Shown here: one piece after another, positions 2,407 through 20,636 of the stretch
How the letters are laid out: each line of letters starts with the position of its first letter
Numbering within the stretch: the first letter of the stretch is position 1
From: Phaeosaccion multiseriatum
Lineage: Eukaryota; Protista; Ochrophyta, other classes
DNA length: 64,000 nt
Assembly (NCBI GenBank): GCA_965112735.1
Contig: OZ218950.1
Span: forward strand, 868,001-932,000
Direction of reading: 5' to 3'
Program-made: the position numbers and the translations under genes
The notes under the pieces: model-generated
What the model saw: only the letters and a program-made list of their open reading frames with translations
What the model was told of the DNA's origin: nothing
Databases searched by the model: none

Positions 2407-3006
2407 CGCGTGTGTGTGTGCAGTGCGTTTGGGGCGACCCTGCGCGATAATTGATACAAATAACTTCTCCCTCCCTCCCTCCCCCCCTTCCCCTCCCTCC
2501 CCCCCCTCCCCTCCCTCTCCCGCTGCTGGGCCTTCCAATCGTCTGGTCCTCCTCTCCCCCCCTCCCTCCCTTTGCACCAACAAACACAACCCCCATCTCT
2601 TCCCCTTGTTCTTCTGGGGGGCAAAAATGAAGCCTCTCCCTCACCCTGAGGTTGACTGAGGCTGAGAGACTCCCCCCTTCCGGACATTCTTTCAACCCCG
2701 TGCGCGTTGCCCACCTTGTCCTTATTCGCCCCTAACAGACGCTGCGACAGGCTGATATTGGCTGTGTGAACAACGGAGCCGACGCACAGGACAAGCAAGC
2801 AAACAAAACACACACCGGAAGAGGAGGAAGGGAAACGCCAAGCCACAGCTCACCAGGACTTTCCCCTGTCCCCACGCCGTTCGTCCAGTTCGAGTGGCAA
2901 TTTAAGGGCACCTGCCCGCCCTAAGAAGTGCCACACGAACGAGCGGAGCGGCGCCATCCACAACCATCCACGACCATCCACGACCATCCGTGGGCCCTTG
3001 CCTTGC

Positions 3007-7879
<4,873 letters not shown>

Positions 7880-8549
7880 ACTCGGTGGCTCTGCCTCCCA
7901 TTTCCTCTTCGCTCTTCCGTCCAACCCATTTCGTACTCCGACGTCCTTCCGGAAGCGTTTAACTTCTTTTCCCGCTCTCCTTTGCACTCCGCCTTTCTGC
8001 CCTCCGACGGGCTGTACACCCCCATGACAAGGACGGTGCGCTCCTCCTGGTAGCTTACTGCGGTCTCCCTTGCTTCCCTCCCCGTCTCTCTACTGCTTCC
8101 TTAATTCTCCTGCCATTGAACTTTGCCTGCCTCCACCCCCTTCTTACCGATCCGAGTCCTCTCCCGCCGCCATCCTCGACGCCAACTCAACCTACACAGG
8201 TGGGTGAGTACCTCAGAACGAATACTTCAGCAAGAAGAGTGTCGTTGATTGAGTTAAAAGGGGATTAATACTACCTGACCCCTTTCTTTTTTTCGAACCA
8301 GCCTTCTTCTGACTGTTTGTTTCGCCCACCCCTGGTACTGCAGTTGGTGCTCCGATGGCCACCTGTGAGGGGGGGGGGGGGATGGGCCAACCGTCCAGCC
8401 ATAACCAAACCATCACAAAGGCGCGTGGAATGAGTGCGTTCATTGCTACGGCTCGATGCAGCTTGTCTCTTACCCCTGCTTTGGTTGGATCCGCTGAACA
8501 AAGGCTGTATGGAAAACGAAGCTAAATAATAGGCAAAGCCTGCCGCCCA

Positions 8550-11473: not shown

Positions 11474-13133
11474 TGGTGATACCGCAGCAGCAGCAGCCAG
11501 GGCCGAGGACTGGACTGATCGTTTTCGCTTCATCCACCACTGGAACTACCCCAGCCTGCTGCACCAGGTGTGTAAGCCCTGATCCCTCCTTTGGGGGGTG
11601 GGTCCCCCGGGGCAGGGACTCAGCGTAATCGCTTCTTGTCTTCTTAGCGCCTCCGTTCCCTCCTCCTCCTGCTTACATCTCTTCTTGTCTCAGCGTCTCC
11701 GTCCCCTCCTCCTCCTCCTCCTCCTCCTCCTCCTCCTCCTCCTCCTCCTCCCGCTCCTCCTCCCTCTCCTCCTCCTCCTTCTTCTCCTTCTTCTTCTCCT
11801 CCTCCTCCTCCTCCTCCTCCTCCTCCTCCTCCTCCTCCTCCTCCTCCTCCTCTTCCTCCCTCCTTCTCTTCGTGTCTTCTCAGCGTCTCCGTCCCCTCCT
11901 CCTCCTTCCGTCTCCTGTGTCCCTTATTCCGACCTTTGTAAGCATGATGATGGCCCGTCCCTCCATGTCTTTTTGACGTGGTTGGGCATCATTGGGCACC
12001 CACCCACCCATTCACCCCCGCACCCACCCACGCGCCCACCCACCCACCCACCCACGCACCCACCCACGCACCCACCCACGCACCCACCCACGCGCCCACT
12101 CATCCCCCCACCCACCTACCCCAGGCCACGGCTGTGCTGGACACCCATCCTTACGGGGGGTGCCTCACAGTGCTAGAGGCCCTCTCCGCAGGGGTGCCCG
12201 TGGTGACTCTGCCCAGTGAGGCCGTCAGAGGTGCGTGTGAGCTTCTGTTGTCTGGCTAGCTGGCTGGCTGGCTGGCTGGCTGGCTAGCTGGCTTCAGTTT
12301 CAGTTTCAATTTCAATTTCAATCAAACACAGTGACGTCTTGCCCTGTAGCAAACCTCCGCTCTCTCTCTCCCCCCCTCTTTTCTATCTGTATGTATCTCT
12401 CTCTCTCTCTCTCTCTCTCTTTATCCTGACTCCCGAGGATTTCTCATTCTCCTGCCTCCCTCCTCCGTGTTGATCGTGCTGCTGCTTCTGCATGCCTGAC
12501 CAATGTGCTGCGATTGGTGATACGGGGATCCAACAGGGCGATACGCCCTCGCAATGTACGAGCAGATGGGAGGGGCGGCGCGGGCGGAGCTCGTGGCGGC
12601 AGACGTGGAGGCCTACGTAGGCATCGCCGTGCGTTTGGGCACTGATAGTGCCTTTCGGGCCAAGATGAAAGAGGAGGTAGCGAGAGGGTATCGAGACAGG
12701 CTCCATAGGTGAGGAGGAGCGCCAGTAGACAGGACAGAAGGCTTTGCGGTTAACATTGGTGGGGATGGAGAGTTTGGGGGGGGTAGGGAAGAGAGAAAGA
12801 GAGAGGAAGAGGGTGGGGAGGGAGGAATAAGCGGGGGCATGAAGGAGATTGCATGAGATGGGGAGAACGTGTCAGGAGGTGCGCTTGCTTCCGTGCTCAT
12901 GCGAGGCACTCTCCTGCCCCTGCTTCTTGCTCTCTCTCTCTTCCGCTCTTGTTGTTGCTTGCTCTCTCTCTCTCTCTCACACACACACTCATTCACTCAA
13001 TCACTCACCCACCCACTCACTCACTCCGTGCTCTGTGTCTGTGCGCTTTGCTCCCTGTGCCAGACACCACGACGTGGTGGAGGAGTGGGCAGGCTTCCTC
13101 CGCAGGGCCCTTCGCATGGTAGAGACTACTTGA
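8550..13133 (+). CDS. GT41 (SPINDLY/OGT/HMW1C-like) glycosyltransferase with a TPR-like region and predicted N-terminal signal peptide; 5 exons
   Basis: Motifs VKVGFAS..RDHSIG, DILVYPDIGM, RLAPVQAVWWGHPVT, GRLFKLHP and LDTHPYGG..LEALSAGVPVVTLP. Exons approx. 8550-8739, 8950-11568, 12125-12230, 12537-12708, 13064-13133. N-terminus MSLLVHWLHVVLLLQLVLPTAST. Confidence 0.88.
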
Positions 13134-14101
13134 TTGGTAGATGGGTCGATAGATAGACAGATGGACAAGCGACGAAGCAGTCAAAATCGCAGCCCGACCC
13201 ACGTCCCACCCCCCCCCCCCCCGGGTCACCCGCCGCCCCCCTGGTCCTTGTGAAGTCTGCAACACCATACCAGGGCTCGCGATGGGCAGACAGTCAGTTC
13301 AGACAGACAGACAGACAGACAGACTGACAGACAGACAAGACAGCCGTGTACCTCACCCGAGAGGAAGAGAGGGAGGGTGGGTGGGAGGGAGAGGGGGGGT
13401 GTGCCATGGATGGACGACCGATCGATGGATCGGATGGATCGGACCAATCGGATCGATGATGGGCACAGGAAGGGCAACCTTAGCCCAGACAGCAAAGAGA
13501 AGACGCCAGGGCATCACACCTTTGCACCTTCGATGGCATGTGCAGCTGCTGTAGCTGTACATGTAGGTGCACCTGGAGCCTATAGCTGCTGTAGCTGTAG
13601 GTGTATCTGGAGCCTATTCGGTGGAGGGAGGGAAGGAAAGACCGGCCCAGAGCCCCGACCTTGACAGAGGAGCAAGCACACCCCTGCCATGCATGCAGAT
13701 GGCAACCGAGGGAGGAAAGCGCGCTGCGGTATCACCAGCTGCTGCTGCTGCTGCCTCATTGGGTACATGGCGCCCCACCTTGACACCCTACTCCTCGGCC
13801 ATGAGTCATGGATGGCGAGCGGATTCCAACCGGGGAGGCTTAGTGCGTCATGACATAGAGCGATGGGAGGGAGGGGCGCAACATCTGCGGTGGCAGCAGC
13901 AGAAGCAGCAGCTGCTGCATGAGGAAGAGGACCAAAAGGAGCGAGACGCCAACTCTAAACAAGAGCACCAAATTGCGAAATTGTGTTGTTCGTGCAACTG
14001 ATGAGGAAAGTTTGAGAACAAGGGCTTGAAGGGGTCTTGCCTTCTTCAATTATATACTCTCTCTTGCAGTCTCTGTCTACTTTAGTATCAACCTTCCCTC
14101 G

Positions 14102-16284
14102 TCATATCACGACGGAGCCAAACACCACCCTACAGAGCTCGCCGAGGGTAAAGTCCAGCTGCATCGTCGCCAGCACAAGGAGGGATATCACCACCATGGC
14201 AACGCTGGCCAGAGCGGCGGGAAGCGTCAGCGGCCGGAGAGAGCGCACCAGTTGGGCATTCGGATACAGATGGGTCATGTCTTCGTTGAGCGAGCGGACG
14301 GCGTAGGTGTAGAGCGAGCCGTTACGACTTGAAACGCTCAGAAGCTTGCCCGTGGGGGCCCAGGCTATGGAGTGAAGCTGTGGTGGGGGGGGAGAGCGGG
14401 TGGAGGGGGGAGGGGCGTGAAGGGCGTGGGGTGTGGGTGGGAAGGGTTGAGGAATTTGGGGGGGGGGGGGGATGTTTCGCAAGAGGAAAGGGGCACGATA
14501 CAAGGGAGAGAGAGAGAGAGAGATAGGGAGGTGCGCGGGTAAGAAAGGTCTACAAAATGCGAAGAAGAAGAGGAAGAAGAAAAGTAGAAGACAACGAAGC
14601 TCCCCTTCTCCCCCGTCCCTCCCTCCCTCCCTCACCTCCTTGTCGAGATAGACGGTCTTGACCTCCTGCAAGTTGGGTGTGCGGATGGAGTCTGAGCCGA
14701 ACTTCTTCCACGTCCCCATGTCTATGAGCTTGACGCAGTTCTTATCCCCACACGTCGCCAGCCTGTTAGGTGGAGCGGGTGGGGTGCTTCAGTTTCAGTT
14801 GATTGCGCCCTATCCATCCATCCCGCCCCCCCCCGCTCTGTGCCTTTTGTAGCCTTGCCGTTCCTTGCTGTGCACCAAAACAAGATGACAAACTACATAC
14901 TACCAACTAACTAACAAGTTGCTTACGATGCACCGAAGTAGTCCATCAGGCTCCCAATCAATCCATCAGGTCATTCCCAAGGGGGCCCTGCCGATGGCGG
15001 CACGTACCGCTGGTTGGTGGGAGAATAGGCGAGGGCACGCAACTCGTCGTTGTGGAACTTTGCGCAGTACTGTGGAGGGGTGGGGGCAAAACGGATGGGA
15101 GGGATCGTACACGGCGTCAGGTTTCTATGGAGGCCTACGGACGCCCTAGACCTACGGAGGCCTTTGAAATACAGTGAGAGAGAGTAGCACGCACGCACGC
15201 TCTTACGCGCGCACAAAAACACGTGTATAATACACATACACATGCATACATACATGCATACGTGCATACATACATGCATACATAAATACACACATATATA
15301 CATACATACAAACATACATACATGCATACATACATACATACACACATACATACATATATGCGTACATACATACATACACACATACATACCTACACACATA
15401 CATACATACATACATACATACATACATACATACATACATACATACATACATACACACATACACTGCATACTTACACACTCATACATACATACCTGCTCCC
15501 GCCCGATTTCGTAAAAGTGTGTGGAGATGACGACGACGTGTCCGCTGCTGAAGCCTGCGATGATGTAACCGTCTCCGAACCATGTGTACGTCACGATACC
15601 GCCGTAGCGAGACTTATCGGACGGTGAGTGGGAGGGTGGTTGGGCAGGCAGAAGGGTGTGTGGGTGTAGGTGGGTGTGTGGGTGTATGGGTGGGTGTGTT
15701 GGTGCATGGGTCAGTGGATGTAGGTGGGTGTGTGGGTGGGTGGTAGGGTGGGTAGAGAGCAAAGCAAGGAGGACAAGGGACAATAGAGACGGTGAAGAAG
15801 TGAGCGAGTGGGAGAGGGAAGACAGCAGAGGGTAGAGCACCGAGGGCCGCTAGCGAGCGAGCGAGAGAGATGTATAAATATGTATTGTATTCCAGAGAGA
15901 AAGACAAGCGAAAGAGCAAAGGCGGGGGTGGGGTGGGTCCGAAAGACATGCGCTTCGTGTAGTAAGCTTCGTTTGAAGACGCAAGAGACAGATCGATGCA
16001 CATGAGGGCTTCCCTCAACGCAAGAGACAGGTCTGTCAATGCAAAGGAGGGCTGCCCCTCACTGACTTGCAGTTGCGCTTTTTACGCTTTACCCTTACCT
16101 GAAAGGCCAGCTCGAGGGCGTTGTCTTGGTCGTTGAGGTTGTAGAGGAGTATGGTGCGCCCCTCCATGTTGACGCTCACCACACTCTCCTGCTGCTCGGC
16201 CTTTCCCCCGAAGGCCACCTCCTGCGGCCGGCACTTGACCTTGACTTGGTCCAGCGTCTCGCCGTTCTCACTCGCTATGCTAAT

Positions 16285-16333
<49 letters not shown>

Positions 16334-17481
16334 CGGGACGGGATTGGAAGAGGCAAAGGCAAAGGCAAAAAGGGCAACAGAGAGAGAGAGAAAGAACCGT
16401 ATAACCAACGGGTATAGGTGATGGTGCGAGTAAGCCGTCCGTCCACCCCCTGTCCCCCCCCCCGCCGCGGAGCCCCCGACGGTACTACATCCCTCCTATA
16501 CCTTAAACACCCCCCCACGCACACACACGCATGCACACACACGCACACACACACGCACACACGCACACGCGCCACCCTCACCCACCCACCCACCCACGTA
16601 CCTGTCTATCCTCGCTGGCAAAGGCTAGCTTGTTCTGCTTGTTCCACGCCCCCCCCACAAGGCGTCGCTTGTGCTTGCCCGCCGCCCACACCTTCTCGTG
16701 TGTGCCCCGGTGGTATATACACATGGTGCCCTTGCCTGTGCCAATGGCCAGATACTCTCCCCTCTTGGACCAGGCCAGGACGGTTACGTCCCTCACGCCC
16801 ACGTCAAGCTTACGGAGCATTCGGCTGCGCCGGTACCACAGCAGCACTGTGGAGGTGCTTGCCTGGGGAGGGGAGGGGAGGGAAGGGGTGGGGGAGGGGA
16901 GGGGAGGGGAGGGGAGGGGAGGGGAGGGGAGGGGAGGGGAGGGGAGGGGAGGGGAGGAGGGGGATGTAAGGTAAGGTAGAACCTATAAGACCCCCCTGGA
17001 GCAGAGCCCCTTGGGTCGTTGACCCCCACTCATCCCCACTCATCCCCACTCACCTGTGAGATTGCGAGCACATTCCCGGCGGGGTCCCATTCAAGGGCAG
17101 TCACCAAGTTGGTCCCCGGGGGGGAGATCTGCAGGCACACAGGCCGTCGAGACGGGGTGAGGGCGTGAGTGAGTGAGTGAGTGAGTAAGTGAGTTGAGTT
17201 TTCAAAGAGGAAGGTGGGGGATAGAAGCAGCTGGTGCAAGCAGCACCTTAAGCTTCCGCAGCTGGTGGGTGGAGAAGACGCCTCAGCTGCTGCCACCCAC
17301 CCCTCCTCTACTGCCATCCACTACCATCCACGATCGCCCACCAAGACGCCTTGGCCTCTGCTTTCTTCGACCGCTTTGCCTGCTTCGCCTTGCTCTCACC
17401 TCCTCCTCCTCGTCCTCCTCCTCTTCTTCTTCTTCCTCCTCCTCCTCCTCCTCCTCCTCCTCCTCCTCCTCCTCCTCCTCC

Positions 17482-17513
<32 letters not shown>

Positions 17514-17805
17514 CTCCTCCTCCTCCTCCTCCTCCTCCTCCTCCTCCTCCTCCTCCTCCTCCTCCTCTTCCTCCTCCTCCTCCTCCTCCTCCTCCTCCTC
17601 CTCTTCATCCTCCTCCTCCACCAAGTCCCCCCCCCCTTCTTCTTCCTCTTCTTCTTACCTCCGCGCAGAGGCTTCCCTTGCAGTCGAACACAAACACCGT
17701 TCTCGAGGCGCCTGAAGTGGCAATGAAGTCTCCTTGGGGCTGCCACGAGAAGCGCACTGGCCCCCTCCCATGAAACCGGTGGTCAATCAGAAACAGCTCA
17801 TCCAT
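14102..17805 (-). CDS. Short IFT144/WDR19-like WD40 protein (first beta-propeller only, ~415 aa) with a C-terminal hydrophobic tail; 8 exons
   Basis: Exons give [100 protein letters not shown]..EIGRE, which match the IFT144 N-terminus as I recall it. The last exon ends LPAALASVAMVVISLLVLATM...VVFGSVVI-TGA. Confidence 0.85.
15230..15490. repeat. (TACA)n intronic microsatellite
   Basis: Direct reading. Confidence 0.9.
17397..17620. repeat. (CCT)n intronic microsatellite (similar tracts at 11705-11860, 20010-20280, 51377-51462)
   Basis: Direct reading. Confidence 0.95.
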
Positions 17806-18455
17806 GTGCCTTCACTTCACTCTTCTCCGCGACTTGTGCAGGTCGGTGTGCCCTAAAGCCTGGACTGTCCTCACCCCTCGCCAATTCCACCTTGGCTCAA
17901 CAACCCTCTGCACTCTGCTCTCGAATGAAGCCGTGGCCCTTCCTGTGTTGAGGATGGCCCTCGGCCTGTCTGTGTAGCTCAATCCTGCTGTCGGTATCTC
18001 TTTGTGGTATCCTCTAGTAGGCGCACTTGCACTTGCTCCCGTTCGCCATCGCCATCGCCCGCCCCTTCACCTCTTGCTTGCTCGTCCTCCTCCTCGTCCT
18101 CGTCCTCCCCTTCCTCCTCGTCTGCTCTCTGGCTAGCACTTCGAGCTGCTGAGCTTCACAAAAAGCGCACAGGATGAAAAGTACAGCCGCTGCAGCCAAG
18201 CAGCCGAACTGATAGAAGACTCCTTTCTCCCAACCACGCTCGTTGACTAACGAGTGTTCTTTCAAGGCCTCCCGCTATCGCCAAGGTCCCCACTCCCGAG
18301 TCAAGGGCCTTCGACCTTCGAGAGAGGGGATTACTTTCGGATTGCATAGGCTCGGGCTCTCGGCGCAAGCGGGATCCTGAGCTGTTTTCATTTCTTCGCG
18401 GGGGGGGCTACTACAGTACGCAGCGTCTCGCTTCTTCTCATACTGGTGTGCGAAG

Positions 18456-20636
18456 ATGAGGTCGCTTTTTGTCATGCTTGGGCTGTTGCTGCTGACGCTG
18501 AGTTGGAGCGCTGAGGGATGGACCATGACGACAAATGGGAGCAAGGCTCCTCAACGAACGCTGCAGCGAAACAATCGAGCAACATTAGGGTAAGCAAGGC
18601 CTGCTGCCTATAGATCTCGCTGCACCATTGGAGGGAGACTGGGAAGGGTTGGGTCTACCTCTGGCTGCAAAGCTTTCACGTTGTTCTTCCCTAGTCCCTT
18701 CCTTCAAGTCTTCAACTTACCCTTCCTCCTCCTCTCTACCCCCGTTGCTGCAATGTTGAGGGGGGGCTAGGGGAGGGAGGATCTTCCTTTGTTGCTCCTT
18801 AGCTATCCTCATTTTTCTTGCCCCGTCATTGAAGTCTTCAACTCAACCTGCTCCCCACACCCCAACTCCGTCACCCTGTGGGGAGCAGGCGAGCAACGAG
18901 GCCCGGTCCCGCTCTCATGGCCAAGTACGAGAACGAGGCGGAGTCTGCTGCCGACATGATGGCCAGAGCCGAAGAGCTGCGCGCACGTGAGTGCATCCGT
19001 GTATATATCCCATCCATCATCCATCCTGCCGGCTGCGGTACTCCACAATCAGCATCGTCCACCGCACCTCTGTCCCTGCGTGTTTCGGCCCTGGTCTGAG
19101 CCAAGTATGCCATATCTAAGTAGGGCCTTCTATTTCGTAAGGAGTGCTTTGGTTTTCGTACAATGGAAGTGCCTCTGTGCTCTATCCCCTCTCACTGATG
19201 AACCTCCTGCATCCACCCCCTCCTCGTTCCACAGAGGCCGACAAGGCTGCTAGCGAGCTGAGCGAGGGGGACCAGGCCGCACTGCTCAACGCGGTCAAGG
19301 AAAAGAAGGAAGCGGAGGTGAGGCAAGGGGGAGAGGGAGGGAGGGAGCGAGGGACGGAGTTGGAGGGAGGAAAGAGGGGAGGGAGGGAAGGAGGAAGGGG
19401 GGGGGCGGAGGGAAGGACGGAGGCCAGTGTGGCCTCTACCTGCCTCTTGCACCACCACCCCTCCACATGTATATATACACCCGTTGGGCATGAAAGAGAG
19501 CCAAGAGAGACCCTGCGTGGAGGAAGTGCTTCATGCGTTACATCCTCTTCGTGACGTGACTGCTCCCAAGTCCACCCCCCTCAAACCAATGAATCGACTT
19601 TGCACTGTGCTTGTGGTCTTCTCCACCCCCCTCCTCTCCTCCCCTCCATTCCTGCCCTCTTTGGACCTCTGTTTCCCCCCCTCCTGTCTCTCTGGATGGA
19701 ACTGACTCCGCAGGCGGCCGCCGAAGCCTCCAGCCCTAAAGTAACCCAGCAAGCGCAGAAAGCGCCCACGGGAGTTTCCAAGTCAATGAAGGAGAAACTG
19801 AGGGCGGAACTCGCCTCCCAGGGGGCCTACGAGGATCGGTGAGTTTCAGTGCCAGTGTCATGTCTCGGCCGCGTTGTCTGGCTCCAGTTGATCCGTTTTC
19901 AAAGGCCGCTAGCTGAGCTGCTCTCTTGATGTGCAGGTTTGGGACCCACTCTCCTCATTCCTCGAACGCCCCCCCGCCCCAATCCCTCCTGTACATAGAT
20001 TCATACCCTCTCCTCCTGCTCCTCCTCCTCCTCCTCCTCCTCCTCCTCCTCCTCCTCCTCCTCCTCCTCCTCCTCCTCCTCCTCCTCCTCCTCCTCCTCC
20101 TCCTCCTCCTCCTCCTCCTCCTCCTCCTCCTCCTGCTCCTGCTCCTCCTCCTCCTCCTCCTCCTCCTCCTCCTCCTCCTCCTCCTCCTCCTCCTCCTCCT
20201 CCTCCTCCTCCTCCTCCTCCTCCTCCTCCTCCTCCTCCTCCTCCTCCTCCTCCTCCTCCTCCTCCTCCTCCTCCTCCTTGTCCTCGTCCTTGTCCTATTC
20301 TGTGACTTCCTCTGGCCGCTCATAACACCCCCCCCTCCCCCACCCTGTGTCCTGTGTCAACTGCTGGTGCTTGTACCCACTTCGGAACTTGGTGCTCGCT
20401 CACCTGGTGCTTTGCGTGCCGTATTCCTACCATATCCATCGTGTTCCTGCGCTTGGGGTTGCCCATGGGTACCCAACAACAGCAAGGCCGGAAACCCCAT
20501 CCTCATCATTGCAGCCATTGTGGGTGTATTGGTGGTGCTGGGTGGCAAGGATATCTTTTACGGCCTCCCGCCAACAGTAGGCCTCGAGGATGTGCTCAGG
20601 CACGCGCAGAACTTTAGCGACGGAATGGTGGCATAG
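18456..20636 (+). CDS. Small putative plastid-targeted protein with a helical middle and C-terminal TM helix; 5 exons
   Basis: Signal peptide MRSLFVMLGLLLLTLSWSAEG followed by W and an R/T/S-rich transit-like segment. Phase-consistent exons give ARAEELRAQADKAASEL...MKEKLRAELASQGAYEDRKAGNPILIIAAIVGVLVVLGGKDIFY. Last exon is 20483-20636. Confidence 0.7.

What the first reader, a model, noticed from the sequence alone, without database searches (positions are those of the whole stretch)
14102..17805. Mini-IFT144: a single IFT-A-like beta-propeller fused to a membrane tail anchor
Seen: similarity to IFT144/WDR19 runs to the end of the first propeller (...SVSSRNGSLYTY). Within the same exon it then switches to a short linker, a ~22-aa hydrophobic helix (LTLPAALASVAMVVISLLVLAT), a second short amphipathic/hydrophobic stretch and a stop. 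Under 1 kb separates this stop from the convergent GT41 stop, so there is no room for the remainder. Established: canonical IFT144 is ~1300+ aa, soluble, with two propellers and a TPR solenoid. The 8 exons appear intact and in frame, which argues against a decaying fragment. Inference: a paralog that tethers an IFT-A cargo/membrane-facing propeller to a membrane, possibly an undescribed ciliary-trafficking adaptor.
Basis: partly seen in the sequence, partly recalled or inferred. Interest (0 to 1): 0.78.

Follow-up and report, generated by a model that had tools for sequence, protein, structure and literature searches.

The report
Membrane-anchored mini copy of IFT144
This alga has a real, expressed gene for a short copy of the cilium-transport protein IFT144 that keeps only the first propeller and ends in a membrane anchor; the same short form is conserved in brown algae, water moulds and other stramenopiles, in at least two species beside the normal long gene, and I found no description of it.

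Summary
An 8-exon minus-strand gene (17805-14102) encodes 417 aa. It has a complete WDR19/IFT144-type first beta-propeller, a ~20-aa linker, a 23-aa hydrophobic helix ending about 20 residues before the C-terminus, and a short terminal helix.

Spliced transcript contigs from a public run match the modelled introns. They run unspliced through the stop into at least 208 nt of 3'UTR. No second propeller or TPR region lies anywhere in the 64 kb.

The main new result is that this is not a one-off truncation. About 25 proteins or fragments, ~400-450 aa when complete, align end to end with it, tail included. All named sources are stramenopiles: brown algae, Chrysoparadoxa, Florenciella, Aphanomyces and Platysulcus.

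- The family splits cleanly from all canonical IFT144 in a tree (SH-aLRT 100).
- It coexists with full-length IFT144 in Chrysoparadoxa and Aphanomyces stellatus.
- It is under strong purifying selection (dN/dS about 0.06; tail 0.09).

The protein lacks every known IFT-A assembly interface, so it is a tail-anchored paralog, not an IFT-A core subunit. A role in ciliary traffic is plausible but untested. I found no paper on it, and earlier notes of this scan do not mention it. Novelty: new variant of a known kind.

The parts
17806..18184 (-). 5'UTR (at least this far)
   Evidence: Transcript contig X5 record 27 covers 17663-18184 in one piece with exon 1
17659..17805 (-). exon 1, start codon at 17805-17803; blade 1 of the propeller
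   Evidence: Pfam PF23389 positions 1-33; the N-terminus aligns with the family's
17054..17128 (-). exon 2
   Evidence: this intron position is shared with Chrysoparadoxa
16602..16862 (-). exon 3
   Evidence: PF23389 E 4.8e-24; WDR19 chains are the best PDB matches; covered by X5 record 27
16099..16284 (-). exon 4
   Evidence: PF23389 E 2.9e-11; RNA joint 15612/16099; the intron after ...LAFQ is shared with brown algae
15493..15612 (-). exon 5, the most IFT144-specific stretch (..WFGDGY..VVVISTH..EIGREQ)
   Evidence: PF23389 E 1e-14; used as query in the representative search
15008..15069 (-). exon 6 (begins with the family-specific YC of the EQ[YF]C motif)
   Evidence: RNA joint 14761/15007 (cut +1)
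14636..14762 (-). exon 7
   Evidence: inside X5 record 25 by length arithmetic
14303..14377 (-). exon 8, part 1: last propeller strands (LHSIAW...NGSLYTY)
   Evidence: AF2 strands 3-26 of the exon-8 product; family alignment
14237..14302 (-). exon 8, part 2: linker (residues 352-373)
   Evidence: Low pLDDT in both models; variable in the family
14231..14236 (-). Arg-Pro just before the helix, the family's [R/K]P motif
   Evidence: Pro is nearly invariant (90% or more) in alignment A3
14162..14230 (-). 23-residue hydrophobic helix, the predicted membrane anchor (residues 376-398)
   Evidence: KD maximum 2.53; AF2 helix 52-74 of the exon-8 product, pLDDT about 93; same position in 20 of the 21 relatives checked
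14105..14161 (-). C-terminal 19 residues with a short conserved helix (..LDF-TLGELCRVVFG..)
   Evidence: Family motif D/Q-hydrophobic-S/T/P-x-x-E/D-L..G; a tail HMM built without the window scores it 28.5 bits, against 12.3 for the best of 2000 shuffles
14102..14104 (-). stop codon TGA
   Evidence: lies inside the unspliced transcript contig X5 record 25
13894..14101 (-). 3'UTR (at least 208 nt)
   Evidence: X5 record 25 lies unbroken on 13894-14379

Best explanation
The locus is a functional gene for a tail-anchored membrane protein.

Shown:
- Residues 1 to about 351 form a complete seven-bladed beta-propeller that is a paralog of the first, membrane-facing propeller of the IFT-A subunit IFT144/WDR19.
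- A flexible linker, an Arg-Pro, a 23-residue hydrophobic helix and a conserved ~19-residue C-terminal helix follow.
- The gene belongs to an undescribed family found across stramenopiles. In at least two species that family sits beside a normal full-length IFT144.

Inferred:
- With no N-terminal signal sequence and a single hydrophobic helix about 20 residues from the end, the protein is probably inserted post-translationally. The propeller would then be in the cytosol and the short conserved tail on the luminal or outer side.
- It lacks the TPR solenoid, so it cannot join IFT-A through the known IFT140, IFT122 and IFT88 interfaces.
- Most likely it acts as a membrane-fixed docking propeller. 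It would hold on a membrane (flagellar base, pre-ciliary vesicle or flagellar membrane) whatever binds the IFT144-type propeller face. It would not ride as a soluble train subunit.
For: Gene and expression:
- The exon model is intact.
- Transcript contigs of run X5 show the modelled joints, an unspliced exon 8 and a 3'UTR.

Fold:
- PF23389 hits.
- The AF2 model of the Florenciella member has pLDDT 90. It shows a propeller at 1-341, a disordered stretch at 346-359 and helices at 369-391 and 395-403.
- The best Foldseek matches are the IFT144 chains 8bbg_A and 8bbf_A, at rmsd 1.7-1.9 A over 352 columns and 39% identity.
- The window's own exon-8 product folds into the same strands, long helix and short helix.

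Family:
- End-to-end alignments that include the tail.
- In 20 of the 21 relatives checked, the most hydrophobic 19-aa window lies 16-27 residues from the C-terminus.
- The tail HMM scores 28.5 bits against 12.3 or less for shuffles.
- Nine mini-specific conserved columns.

Taxa: Scytosiphon, Ascophyllum, Ectocarpus, Chrysoparadoxa, Florenciella, Aphanomyces stellatus and A. astaci, Peronosclerospora (fragment) and Platysulcus.

Paralogy:
- The tree splits the minis from all canonical IFT144 with SH-aLRT 100.
- Both forms occur in Chrysoparadoxa (P0156 and P0291) and in A. stellatus (P0111 and P0324).

Selection: Scytosiphon against Ascophyllum gives dN/dS 0.058 overall, 0.051 for the propeller and 0.094 for the tail.

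Context from papers:
- IFT144-WD projects toward the ciliary membrane, and an unidentified density bridges IFT144-WD and IFT140-WD (PMC10191852).
- IFT-A still assembles without the IFT144 N propeller, and assembly goes through the TPR and C-terminal regions (bioRxiv 10.1101/2022.08.09.503213).

All complete named carriers are organisms with a flagellate stage (my own knowledge). Earlier notes place flagellar genes in this same genome (unchecked).
Against: - No localisation, interaction or phenotype data exist, so the ciliary role rests on ancestry and phyletic pattern only.
- I could not test absence from flagellum-less stramenopiles, because the searches were capped.
- Membrane insertion is predicted from hydropathy and AF2 helices, not from a dedicated topology predictor or an experiment.
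- The brown-algal helices are Ala/Gly-rich (KD about 2.0), at the low end for a transmembrane segment.
- This genome's own full-length IFT144 was not located.
- dS between the two brown algae is about 1.26, near saturation, so the ratio is approximate.
- Contigs cannot exclude a rare onward-spliced isoform.
Confidence: 0.55

Rival explanations
1. It is a real, conserved tail-anchored propeller protein, but its function has left the cilium. After duplication the propeller would have been re-used as a membrane-bound WD40 scaffold in general endomembrane biology (ER, Golgi, nuclear envelope or plastid-ER), with no link to IFT.
For: - It lacks all IFT-A assembly interfaces.
- A long branch separates the minis from every canonical IFT144.
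- There are nine mini-specific and seven canonical-specific conserved columns.
- Transcripts appear in bulk-culture transcriptomes (MMETSP Florenciella, Platysulcus) and in run X5. Nothing is known about the life stage sampled.
- A piece of the gene is present in Peronosclerospora sorghi, a downy mildew that to my knowledge makes no zoospores.
Against: - 47 propeller columns stay conserved together with canonical IFT144.
- All named carriers with a complete copy are flagellate at some stage.
- The Peronosclerospora entry is only a 185-aa piece that ends before the anchor.
Confidence: 0.3
2. The hydrophobic helix is not a membrane span. It would be a buried or oligomerising helix, or an in-plane or lipid-droplet-type segment, of a soluble or peripheral protein.
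For: - The brown-algal versions are Ala/Gly-rich with modest hydropathy of about 2.0.
- No dedicated topology predictor was available.
- The conserved helix after it could pair with it.
Against: - A 22-24-residue uncharged stretch sits at a fixed distance from the C-terminus in 20 of the 21 relatives checked, although its sequence is almost free to vary. That pattern is typical of membrane spans.
- It is preceded by a conserved basic residue plus Pro, and followed by an acidic residue in most members.
- KD reaches 2.5-3.05 in many members.
- AF2 gives one straight isolated helix after a disordered linker.
Confidence: 0.08
3. It is an artefact or relic: a full-length IFT144 broken by misassembly or rearrangement, a pseudogene, or the first part of a gene whose transcripts splice onward.
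For: - The hydrophobic tail by itself could arise by chance: 83 of 1079 stop-free segments are as hydrophobic.
- The DNA contigs that bridge the 3' end may come from the sample the assembly was built from.
Against: - A transcript contig runs unbroken from exon 8 through the stop to 13894.
- DNA contigs bridge 13404-14496.
- The same architecture with a homologous tail is encoded in independent genomes and transcriptomes.
- dN/dS is about 0.06.
- Canonical IFT144 in species that have a mini keeps its own first propeller, so this is not a gene fission.
Confidence: 0.03

Closest known systems
IFT144 / WDR19 (IFT-A subunit)
   Same: The propeller is clearly homologous to IFT144's first propeller (WD40-A, residues 1-350). 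It matches Pfam PF23389, shows 36-41% identity to full-length IFT144 over about 355 aa, and superposes on chain 8bbf_A at rmsd 1.7 A.
   Different: It has no second propeller, no TPR solenoid and no C-terminal IFT88-binding region. It carries a C-terminal membrane anchor instead. It groups outside all canonical IFT144 in the tree and coexists with a canonical copy.
Sec12 / PREB (COPII initiation factor), compared from my own knowledge
   Same: The overall layout is the same: a cytosolic seven-bladed beta-propeller of about 350 aa, held on a membrane by a single C-terminal span with a short luminal tail. Human PREB is a protein of similar size. Both belong to the wider coat-related world.
   Different: There is no specific sequence or structural kinship. 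Sec12 is not among the Pfam hits or the 50 best Foldseek matches. The GEF activity and K-loop of Sec12 were not examined and are not expected.
ODA16 / DAW1 (stand-alone propeller that adapts cargo to IFT)
   Same: It is a single beta-propeller protein working in ciliary transport without a solenoid. It gives the best non-IFT144 structural matches (5mzh, 5nnz).
   Different: Identity is only 16%. ODA16 is soluble, has no membrane anchor and belongs to a different family.
IFT140, IFT122, IFT121 (the other IFT-A propeller-solenoid subunits)
   Same: They are weakly matched by the same exons (PF23383, PF23381), and their propellers also face the membrane in trains.
   Different: The scores are far weaker than for WDR19. 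All of them are two-propeller plus TPR proteins.

Membership tests
Canonical IFT144/WDR19 | First beta-propeller (Pfam PF23389) | tested here: met
   Exons 1-5 hit PF23389, the best at E 4.8e-24. Whole relatives score 1e-113. The fold matches IFT144 chains.
Canonical IFT144/WDR19 | Second beta-propeller (PF15911) | tested here: not met
   The stop comes about 65 residues after the first propeller. tblastn of nine full-length IFT144 finds nothing beyond their residue ~290 in the 64 kb.
Canonical IFT144/WDR19 | TPR solenoid that binds IFT140 and the IFT122 C-terminal domain, plus the C-terminal cleft for IFT88 | tested here: not met
   Absent from the gene and the window. The interfaces are as described in bioRxiv 10.1101/2022.08.09.503213.
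Canonical IFT144/WDR19 | Groups with IFT144 orthologs in a tree | tested here: not met
   16 minis lie on one side and 21 full-length IFT144 on the other, SH-aLRT 100. A stramenopile-only origin is not rejected (AU p 0.153).
Stramenopile tail-anchored WDR19-propeller family (delimited here) | End-to-end similarity at about 400-450 aa, including the tail | tested here: met
   blastp covers residues 1-413/416 of the mini against P0111, P0048, P0152 and P0153. Identity to the brown-algal and Chrysoparadoxa members is 59-61%.
Stramenopile tail-anchored WDR19-propeller family (delimited here) | [R/K]-P, then a 22-24-residue hydrophobic helix 16-27 residues from the end, then a conserved short C-terminal helix | tested here: met
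   A tail HMM built without the window scores 28.5 bits (E 2e-7) against 12.3 or less for 2000 shuffles and 1078 window segments.
Stramenopile tail-anchored WDR19-propeller family (delimited here) | Family-specific residues in the propeller (for example EQ[Y/F]C after ..ISTH..EIG) | tested here: met
   The window has EIGREQYC. Nine columns are conserved at 80% or more in minis and 15% or less in canonical IFT144.
Tail-anchored membrane proteins | Single transmembrane segment close to the C-terminus (within about 30-40 residues) | tested here: met
   Residues 376-398 of 417. AF2 gives one helix. This is a prediction only.
Tail-anchored membrane proteins | No N-terminal signal or other hydrophobic segment; N-terminal domain cytosolic | tested here: inconclusive
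   The 15-aa hydropathy maximum in the N-terminal ~45 residues is 0.9, and the only strong hydrophobic window is the C-terminal one. No signal-peptide predictor was available, and topology was not tested.
Tail-anchored membrane proteins | Post-translational insertion (GET/TRC40 or EMC route) | not testable with these tools
   Needs an insertion assay.
Sec12/PREB | Homology to the Sec12 propeller and its Sar1-GEF loop | tested here: not met
   There is no Sec12 family among the Pfam hits or the 50 best Foldseek PDB matches. Only the architecture is alike.

The most novel reading that the evidence does not exclude
The family could be a stramenopile invention that fixes a copy of the membrane-facing IFT144 propeller onto a membrane. 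There it would capture the still unidentified partner that bridges IFT144-WD and IFT140-WD in trains, or it would compete with IFT-A for that partner.

In this way it could couple a lineage-specific membrane cargo route to the IFT system. One candidate route is the delivery or anchoring of vesicle-borne tubular flagellar hairs (mastigonemes), the hallmark of the group. That would be the first membrane-integral relative of an IFT subunit, and a handle on what the IFT144 propeller binds.
Probability: 0.15. Interest if true: 0.85.

Novelty: new variant of a known kind. Interest (0 to 1): 0.66.

Why it matters
As far as I know, IFT-A subunits are described as soluble two-propeller plus solenoid proteins. 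I found no membrane-integral relative in the papers searched.

A conserved, selected, tail-anchored copy of just the membrane-facing IFT144 propeller gives a natural separation-of-function version of that domain. This family is present from deep-branching Platysulcus to oomycetes and brown algae.

It could reveal what the IFT144 propeller binds. In-situ train structures show an unassigned density at that spot (PMC10191852). It could also show how stramenopiles, with their hair-bearing flagella, link membranes to the transport machinery.

There is a practical point as well. Automatic pipelines label these genes 'WD repeat-containing protein 19' or 'unnamed protein product'. That can inflate or confuse IFT-A presence/absence tables in comparative studies.

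Tried and rejected
- **Rest of IFT144 in the window.** tblastn with nine full-length proteins found none.
- **Earlier notes of this scan.** A word search for IFT144, WDR19, intraflagellar and IFT found nothing.
- **Known family or structure for the tail.** Pfam and PDB searches with exon 8 returned only generic WD40 matches to its first 30 residues.
- **First full-length query.** I used P0013 as a 'close' full-length IFT144 to find stramenopile orthologs. It turned out to be euglenozoan-like and the search was wasted. P0055 (Chrysophaeum) worked.
- **This organism's own full-length IFT144.** I looked among the database hits. The only genomic Logan candidate I fetched (P0177, L005) is an intronless gene in a compact genome, so it is another organism. 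No hit was closer than 54% to Chrysoparadoxa IFT144.
- **Brown-algal full-length IFT144.** It did not appear among the 120 rows listed, and the searches were capped at 8000 candidates. I draw no conclusion from that.
- **Taxonomy of the unnamed, more divergent minis** (P0134, P0023, P0081, P0083). The one contig I tried has no DNA on file, so a range beyond stramenopiles is neither shown nor excluded.
- **ESM Atlas searches,** by features and by fold. They gave only generic WD40 or canonical WDR19 clusters.
- **Fusion partners as a functional clue.** The 705-aa variant P0069 holds only propeller pieces with inserts.
- **dN/dS between the window and brown algae.** It is saturated (dS above 1.2, pN about 0.3) and is not used.
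- **Gene fission.** Rejected, because canonical IFT144 in species that have a mini keeps its own first propeller.
Full report
**1. What is at the locus**

Reading the minus strand of 17805-14102 gives eight exons with canonical GT..AG borders and one open frame of 417 codons.

I searched the exons one by one by reference. Exons 1-5 match Pfam PF23389, 'WDR19 first beta-propeller'. It is the best family for exons 1, 3, 4 and 5 and the second-best for exon 2. Exon 3 scores E 4.8e-24, exon 4 scores 2.9e-11 and exon 5 scores 1e-14. Together they cover profile positions 1-251 of 325. The best solved-structure matches of exon 3 are the WDR19/IFT144 chains of the human, Chlamydomonas, Tetrahymena and Leishmania IFT-A structures.

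Exon 8 begins with the last propeller strands (...NGSLYTY). It then carries a ~22-residue linker, an Arg-Pro, a 23-residue uncharged hydrophobic stretch (residues 376-398), 19 more residues and a stop. The Kyte-Doolittle 19-aa maximum is 2.53. Nothing known matches that tail.

tblastn with nine full-length IFT144 proteins finds only their first ~290 residues in the whole 64 kb, all in this gene.

**2. Is it a real transcript end or a broken gene?**

I laid public runs on 13000-18900, which is 5901 letters and within the operators' limit. Run X5 is labelled 'DNA?', but its contigs are spliced, so it is transcript data.

- Joints at 15612/16099 and 14761/15007 (cut +1) have CT..AC ends on the + strand. 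These are exactly introns 4 and 6 of the model.
- One 795-nt contig lies unbroken on 13894-14379. The rest of its length equals exons 7, 6 and 5 together.
- A 1076-nt contig holds the end of exon 5, then exons 4, 3, 2 and 1, and a 5'UTR reaching 18184.

So the gene is expressed and spliced as modelled. The assembled transcript runs through the stop into at least 208 nt of 3'UTR without leaving exon 8. DNA contigs of runs X1-X3 bridge 13404-14496.

Two caveats apply. Those DNA runs may be the sample the assembly was made from. Contigs also drop rare isoforms.

**3. The tail is conserved: a family, not an accident**

A hydrophobic window this strong occurs in 83 of 1079 stop-free six-frame segments of this GC-rich window. 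The helix alone therefore proves little.

I used the one exhaustive protein search on exon 5, the most IFT144-specific 40 residues. It returned 290 proteins at E of 1e-3 or better. I aligned the 150 listed against the joined model, built only inside local scripts. Full-length IFT144 proteins (1189-1453 aa) align only to about residues 1-354. A second set, ~400-450 aa when complete, aligns end to end, tail included.

A profile search and cluster look-ups added named members:

| Species | Length (aa) | Note |
|---|---|---|
| Scytosiphon promiscuus | 423 | brown alga |
| Ascophyllum nodosum | 429 | brown alga |
| Ectocarpus sp. | partial model | brown alga |
| Chrysoparadoxa australica | 454 | |
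| Florenciella parvula | 409 | transcript |
| Aphanomyces stellatus | 454 | oomycete |
| Aphanomyces astaci | 438 | oomycete |
| Peronosclerospora sorghi | 185 | piece only |
| Platysulcus tardus | 443 | deep-branching stramenopile |

The window's protein is 59-61% identical to the brown-algal and Chrysoparadoxa members (64% to the partial Ectocarpus model), so it is none of these species.

In 20 of the 21 relatives checked, the most hydrophobic 19-residue window lies 16-27 residues from the C-terminus. The exception is the 705-aa variant P0069. The helix is preceded by [R/K]-P in most members; the Pro is nearly invariant. A short conserved motif follows, roughly D/Q-hydrophobic-S/T/P-x-x-E/D-L...G.

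A profile of the tails built without the window scores the window's 62-residue tail at 28.5 bits. The best of 2000 shuffles scores 12.3, and none of 1078 background segments comes near.

**4. Structure**

AlphaFold2 on the Florenciella member, with a 38-row alignment, gives mean pLDDT 90. The model has a closed propeller over residues 1-341, a low-confidence linker at 346-359, a straight 23-residue helix at 369-391 and a short helix at 395-403.

Foldseek against the PDB ranks IFT144 chains first. Chains 8bbg_A and 8bbf_A superpose at rmsd 1.7-1.9 A over 352 columns with 39% identity. Tetrahymena, Chlamydomonas and Leishmania IFT144 follow, and only then ODA16 and generic WD40 proteins at about 16% identity.

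The window's own exon-8 product, folded with the family tails, shows the same pattern. It has three strands, a linker, a 23-residue helix with pLDDT about 93 and a 9-residue helix.

**5. Paralog, not ortholog, fission or relic**

A maximum-likelihood tree of the propellers (37 rows) puts the 16 minis on one side of a branch and 21 full-length IFT144 on the other. The full-length set covers stramenopiles, haptophyte, dinoflagellate, animals, excavates and others. Support is SH-aLRT 100.

The minis do not nest inside stramenopile IFT144. However, an AU test does not reject a tree that joins them with stramenopile IFT144 (p 0.153). A duplication in the stramenopile ancestor followed by fast divergence is therefore as possible as an older origin.

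Two species have both forms. Chrysoparadoxa has P0156 (mini) and P0291 (1433 aa). Aphanomyces stellatus has P0111 and P0324 (1401 aa). Those full-length proteins keep their own first propeller, so this is not a gene fission.

I rebuilt coding sequences from the Scytosiphon locus and an Ascophyllum transcript contig. They give dN/dS 0.058 overall, 0.051 for the propeller and 0.094 for the tail. dS is 1.26, near saturation, so the values are approximate.

Across the family, 47 propeller columns are conserved together with canonical IFT144. Nine are mini-specific, for example the Cys of EQ[Y/F]C. Seven are canonical-specific. Two intron positions are shared between the window and its relatives.

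**6. How it most likely works**

Shown: the protein is an expressed, selected, conserved IFT144-type propeller followed by a C-terminal hydrophobic helix.

Inferred: there is no hydrophobic N-terminus and a single span about 20 residues from the end. It therefore has the layout of a tail-anchored protein, with the propeller in the cytosol and the short conserved helix on the far side of the membrane. The acidic, non-basic flank suggests the ER/secretory route rather than mitochondria. That last point is my inference from general knowledge of tail-anchor sorting.

Three points from published IFT-A structures bear on function:
- The IFT144 N propeller (residues 2-349) can be deleted without preventing complex assembly. 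Assembly runs through the TPR region (IFT140, IFT122 C-terminal domain) and the C-terminal cleft for IFT88 (bioRxiv 10.1101/2022.08.09.503213).
- WD40-A is flexible (PMC10066299).
- In situ, IFT144-WD 'projects out toward the membrane'. An unassigned density bridges IFT144-WD and IFT140-WD and may be a cargo or adapter (PMC10191852).

The mini form therefore cannot be an IFT-A core subunit. The most economical reading is a membrane-fixed docking propeller that presents the IFT144-type binding face at a membrane. It would either recruit the partner of that face or compete for it.

I put 0.9 on the structural part (a real tail-anchored paralog family) and about 0.45 on a flagellum-related role. 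That gives roughly 0.55 for the statement as a whole. The chief rival, a conserved membrane WD40 scaffold with no ciliary link, gets 0.3.

**7. Comparison with what is known, and novelty**

The protein is homologous to IFT144 but fails four of five defining features of that subunit, so it should not be filed as IFT144. Its layout resembles Sec12/PREB (cytosolic propeller plus C-terminal span), but there is no specific kinship.

Seven full-text searches found no paper on a truncated, tail-anchored or 'IFT144-like' paralog, or on IFT144 in oomycetes. Databases call the members 'hypothetical', 'unnamed protein product' or, automatically, 'WD repeat-containing protein 19'. The scan's own notes had no entry on it.

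I rate it a new variant of a known kind.

**8. Limits**

- I could not search this genome for its full-length IFT144.
- I could not establish the family's absence anywhere, because the searches were capped at 8000 candidates.
- I could not name the source of the more divergent unnamed members.
- I could not run a topology predictor.
- Relatives with protein ids and the exons by reference stood in for it.

Noticed in passing
window 13000-18900 (run X5): The run listed as 'DNA?' holds contigs spliced exactly at the modelled introns, so it is transcript data. Its label should not be trusted when judging expression elsewhere in this genome.
   Followed up: partly
window 18456-18940 (+ strand): The divergent upstream neighbour starts with a signal-peptide-like N-terminus (MRSLFVMLGLLLLTLSW...). 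An X5 contig ends at 18597 and continues with letters found near 18899. This implies an intron of about 300 bp and high transcript depth.
   Followed up: no
window 15230-15480, 16290-16330, 16860-16960, 17400-17620: The introns of this gene are packed with microsatellites: (CATA)n, (GA)n, (GGGGAG)n and a ~220-bp (CCT)n run. Read contigs break at these places.
   Followed up: no
L002 1-2517 (minus) and 3001-7565 (plus), Ascophyllum nodosum: The Ascophyllum ortholog lies head to head with a DRC7 gene (nexin-dynein regulatory complex, a flagellar protein). The neighbours differ in Scytosiphon (ankyrin), Chrysoparadoxa (VDE, RabGAP) and this window, so it may be coincidence.
   Followed up: no
L004 8146-8401, Chrysoparadoxa australica P0156: The deposited model departs from the family about 16 residues into the hydrophobic helix and ends in an unrelated 60-residue tail. 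No other frame of that exon shows the family motif. It could be an unannotated intron, an assembly error or a real change; this is unresolved.
   Followed up: partly
P0069 and four cluster mates (705 aa, Logan/JGI): This is a longer variant of the family with large inserts and an N-terminal extension, but only WDR19-propeller pieces in Pfam. It keeps a K-P plus hydrophobic helix plus C-terminal motif.
   Followed up: partly
P0002, Peronosclerospora sorghi: Only a 185-aa piece of a mini-type propeller is on record, ending just after the last blade. To my knowledge this downy mildew forms no zoospores, so the piece may be a decaying copy. That would be a useful data point for the flagella-linkage test.
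   Followed up: no
P0284 and P0296, Aureococcus anophagefferens: Full-length-type IFT144 proteins are annotated in Aureococcus, an alga generally described as non-flagellate. I saw this in the hit list only.
   Followed up: no
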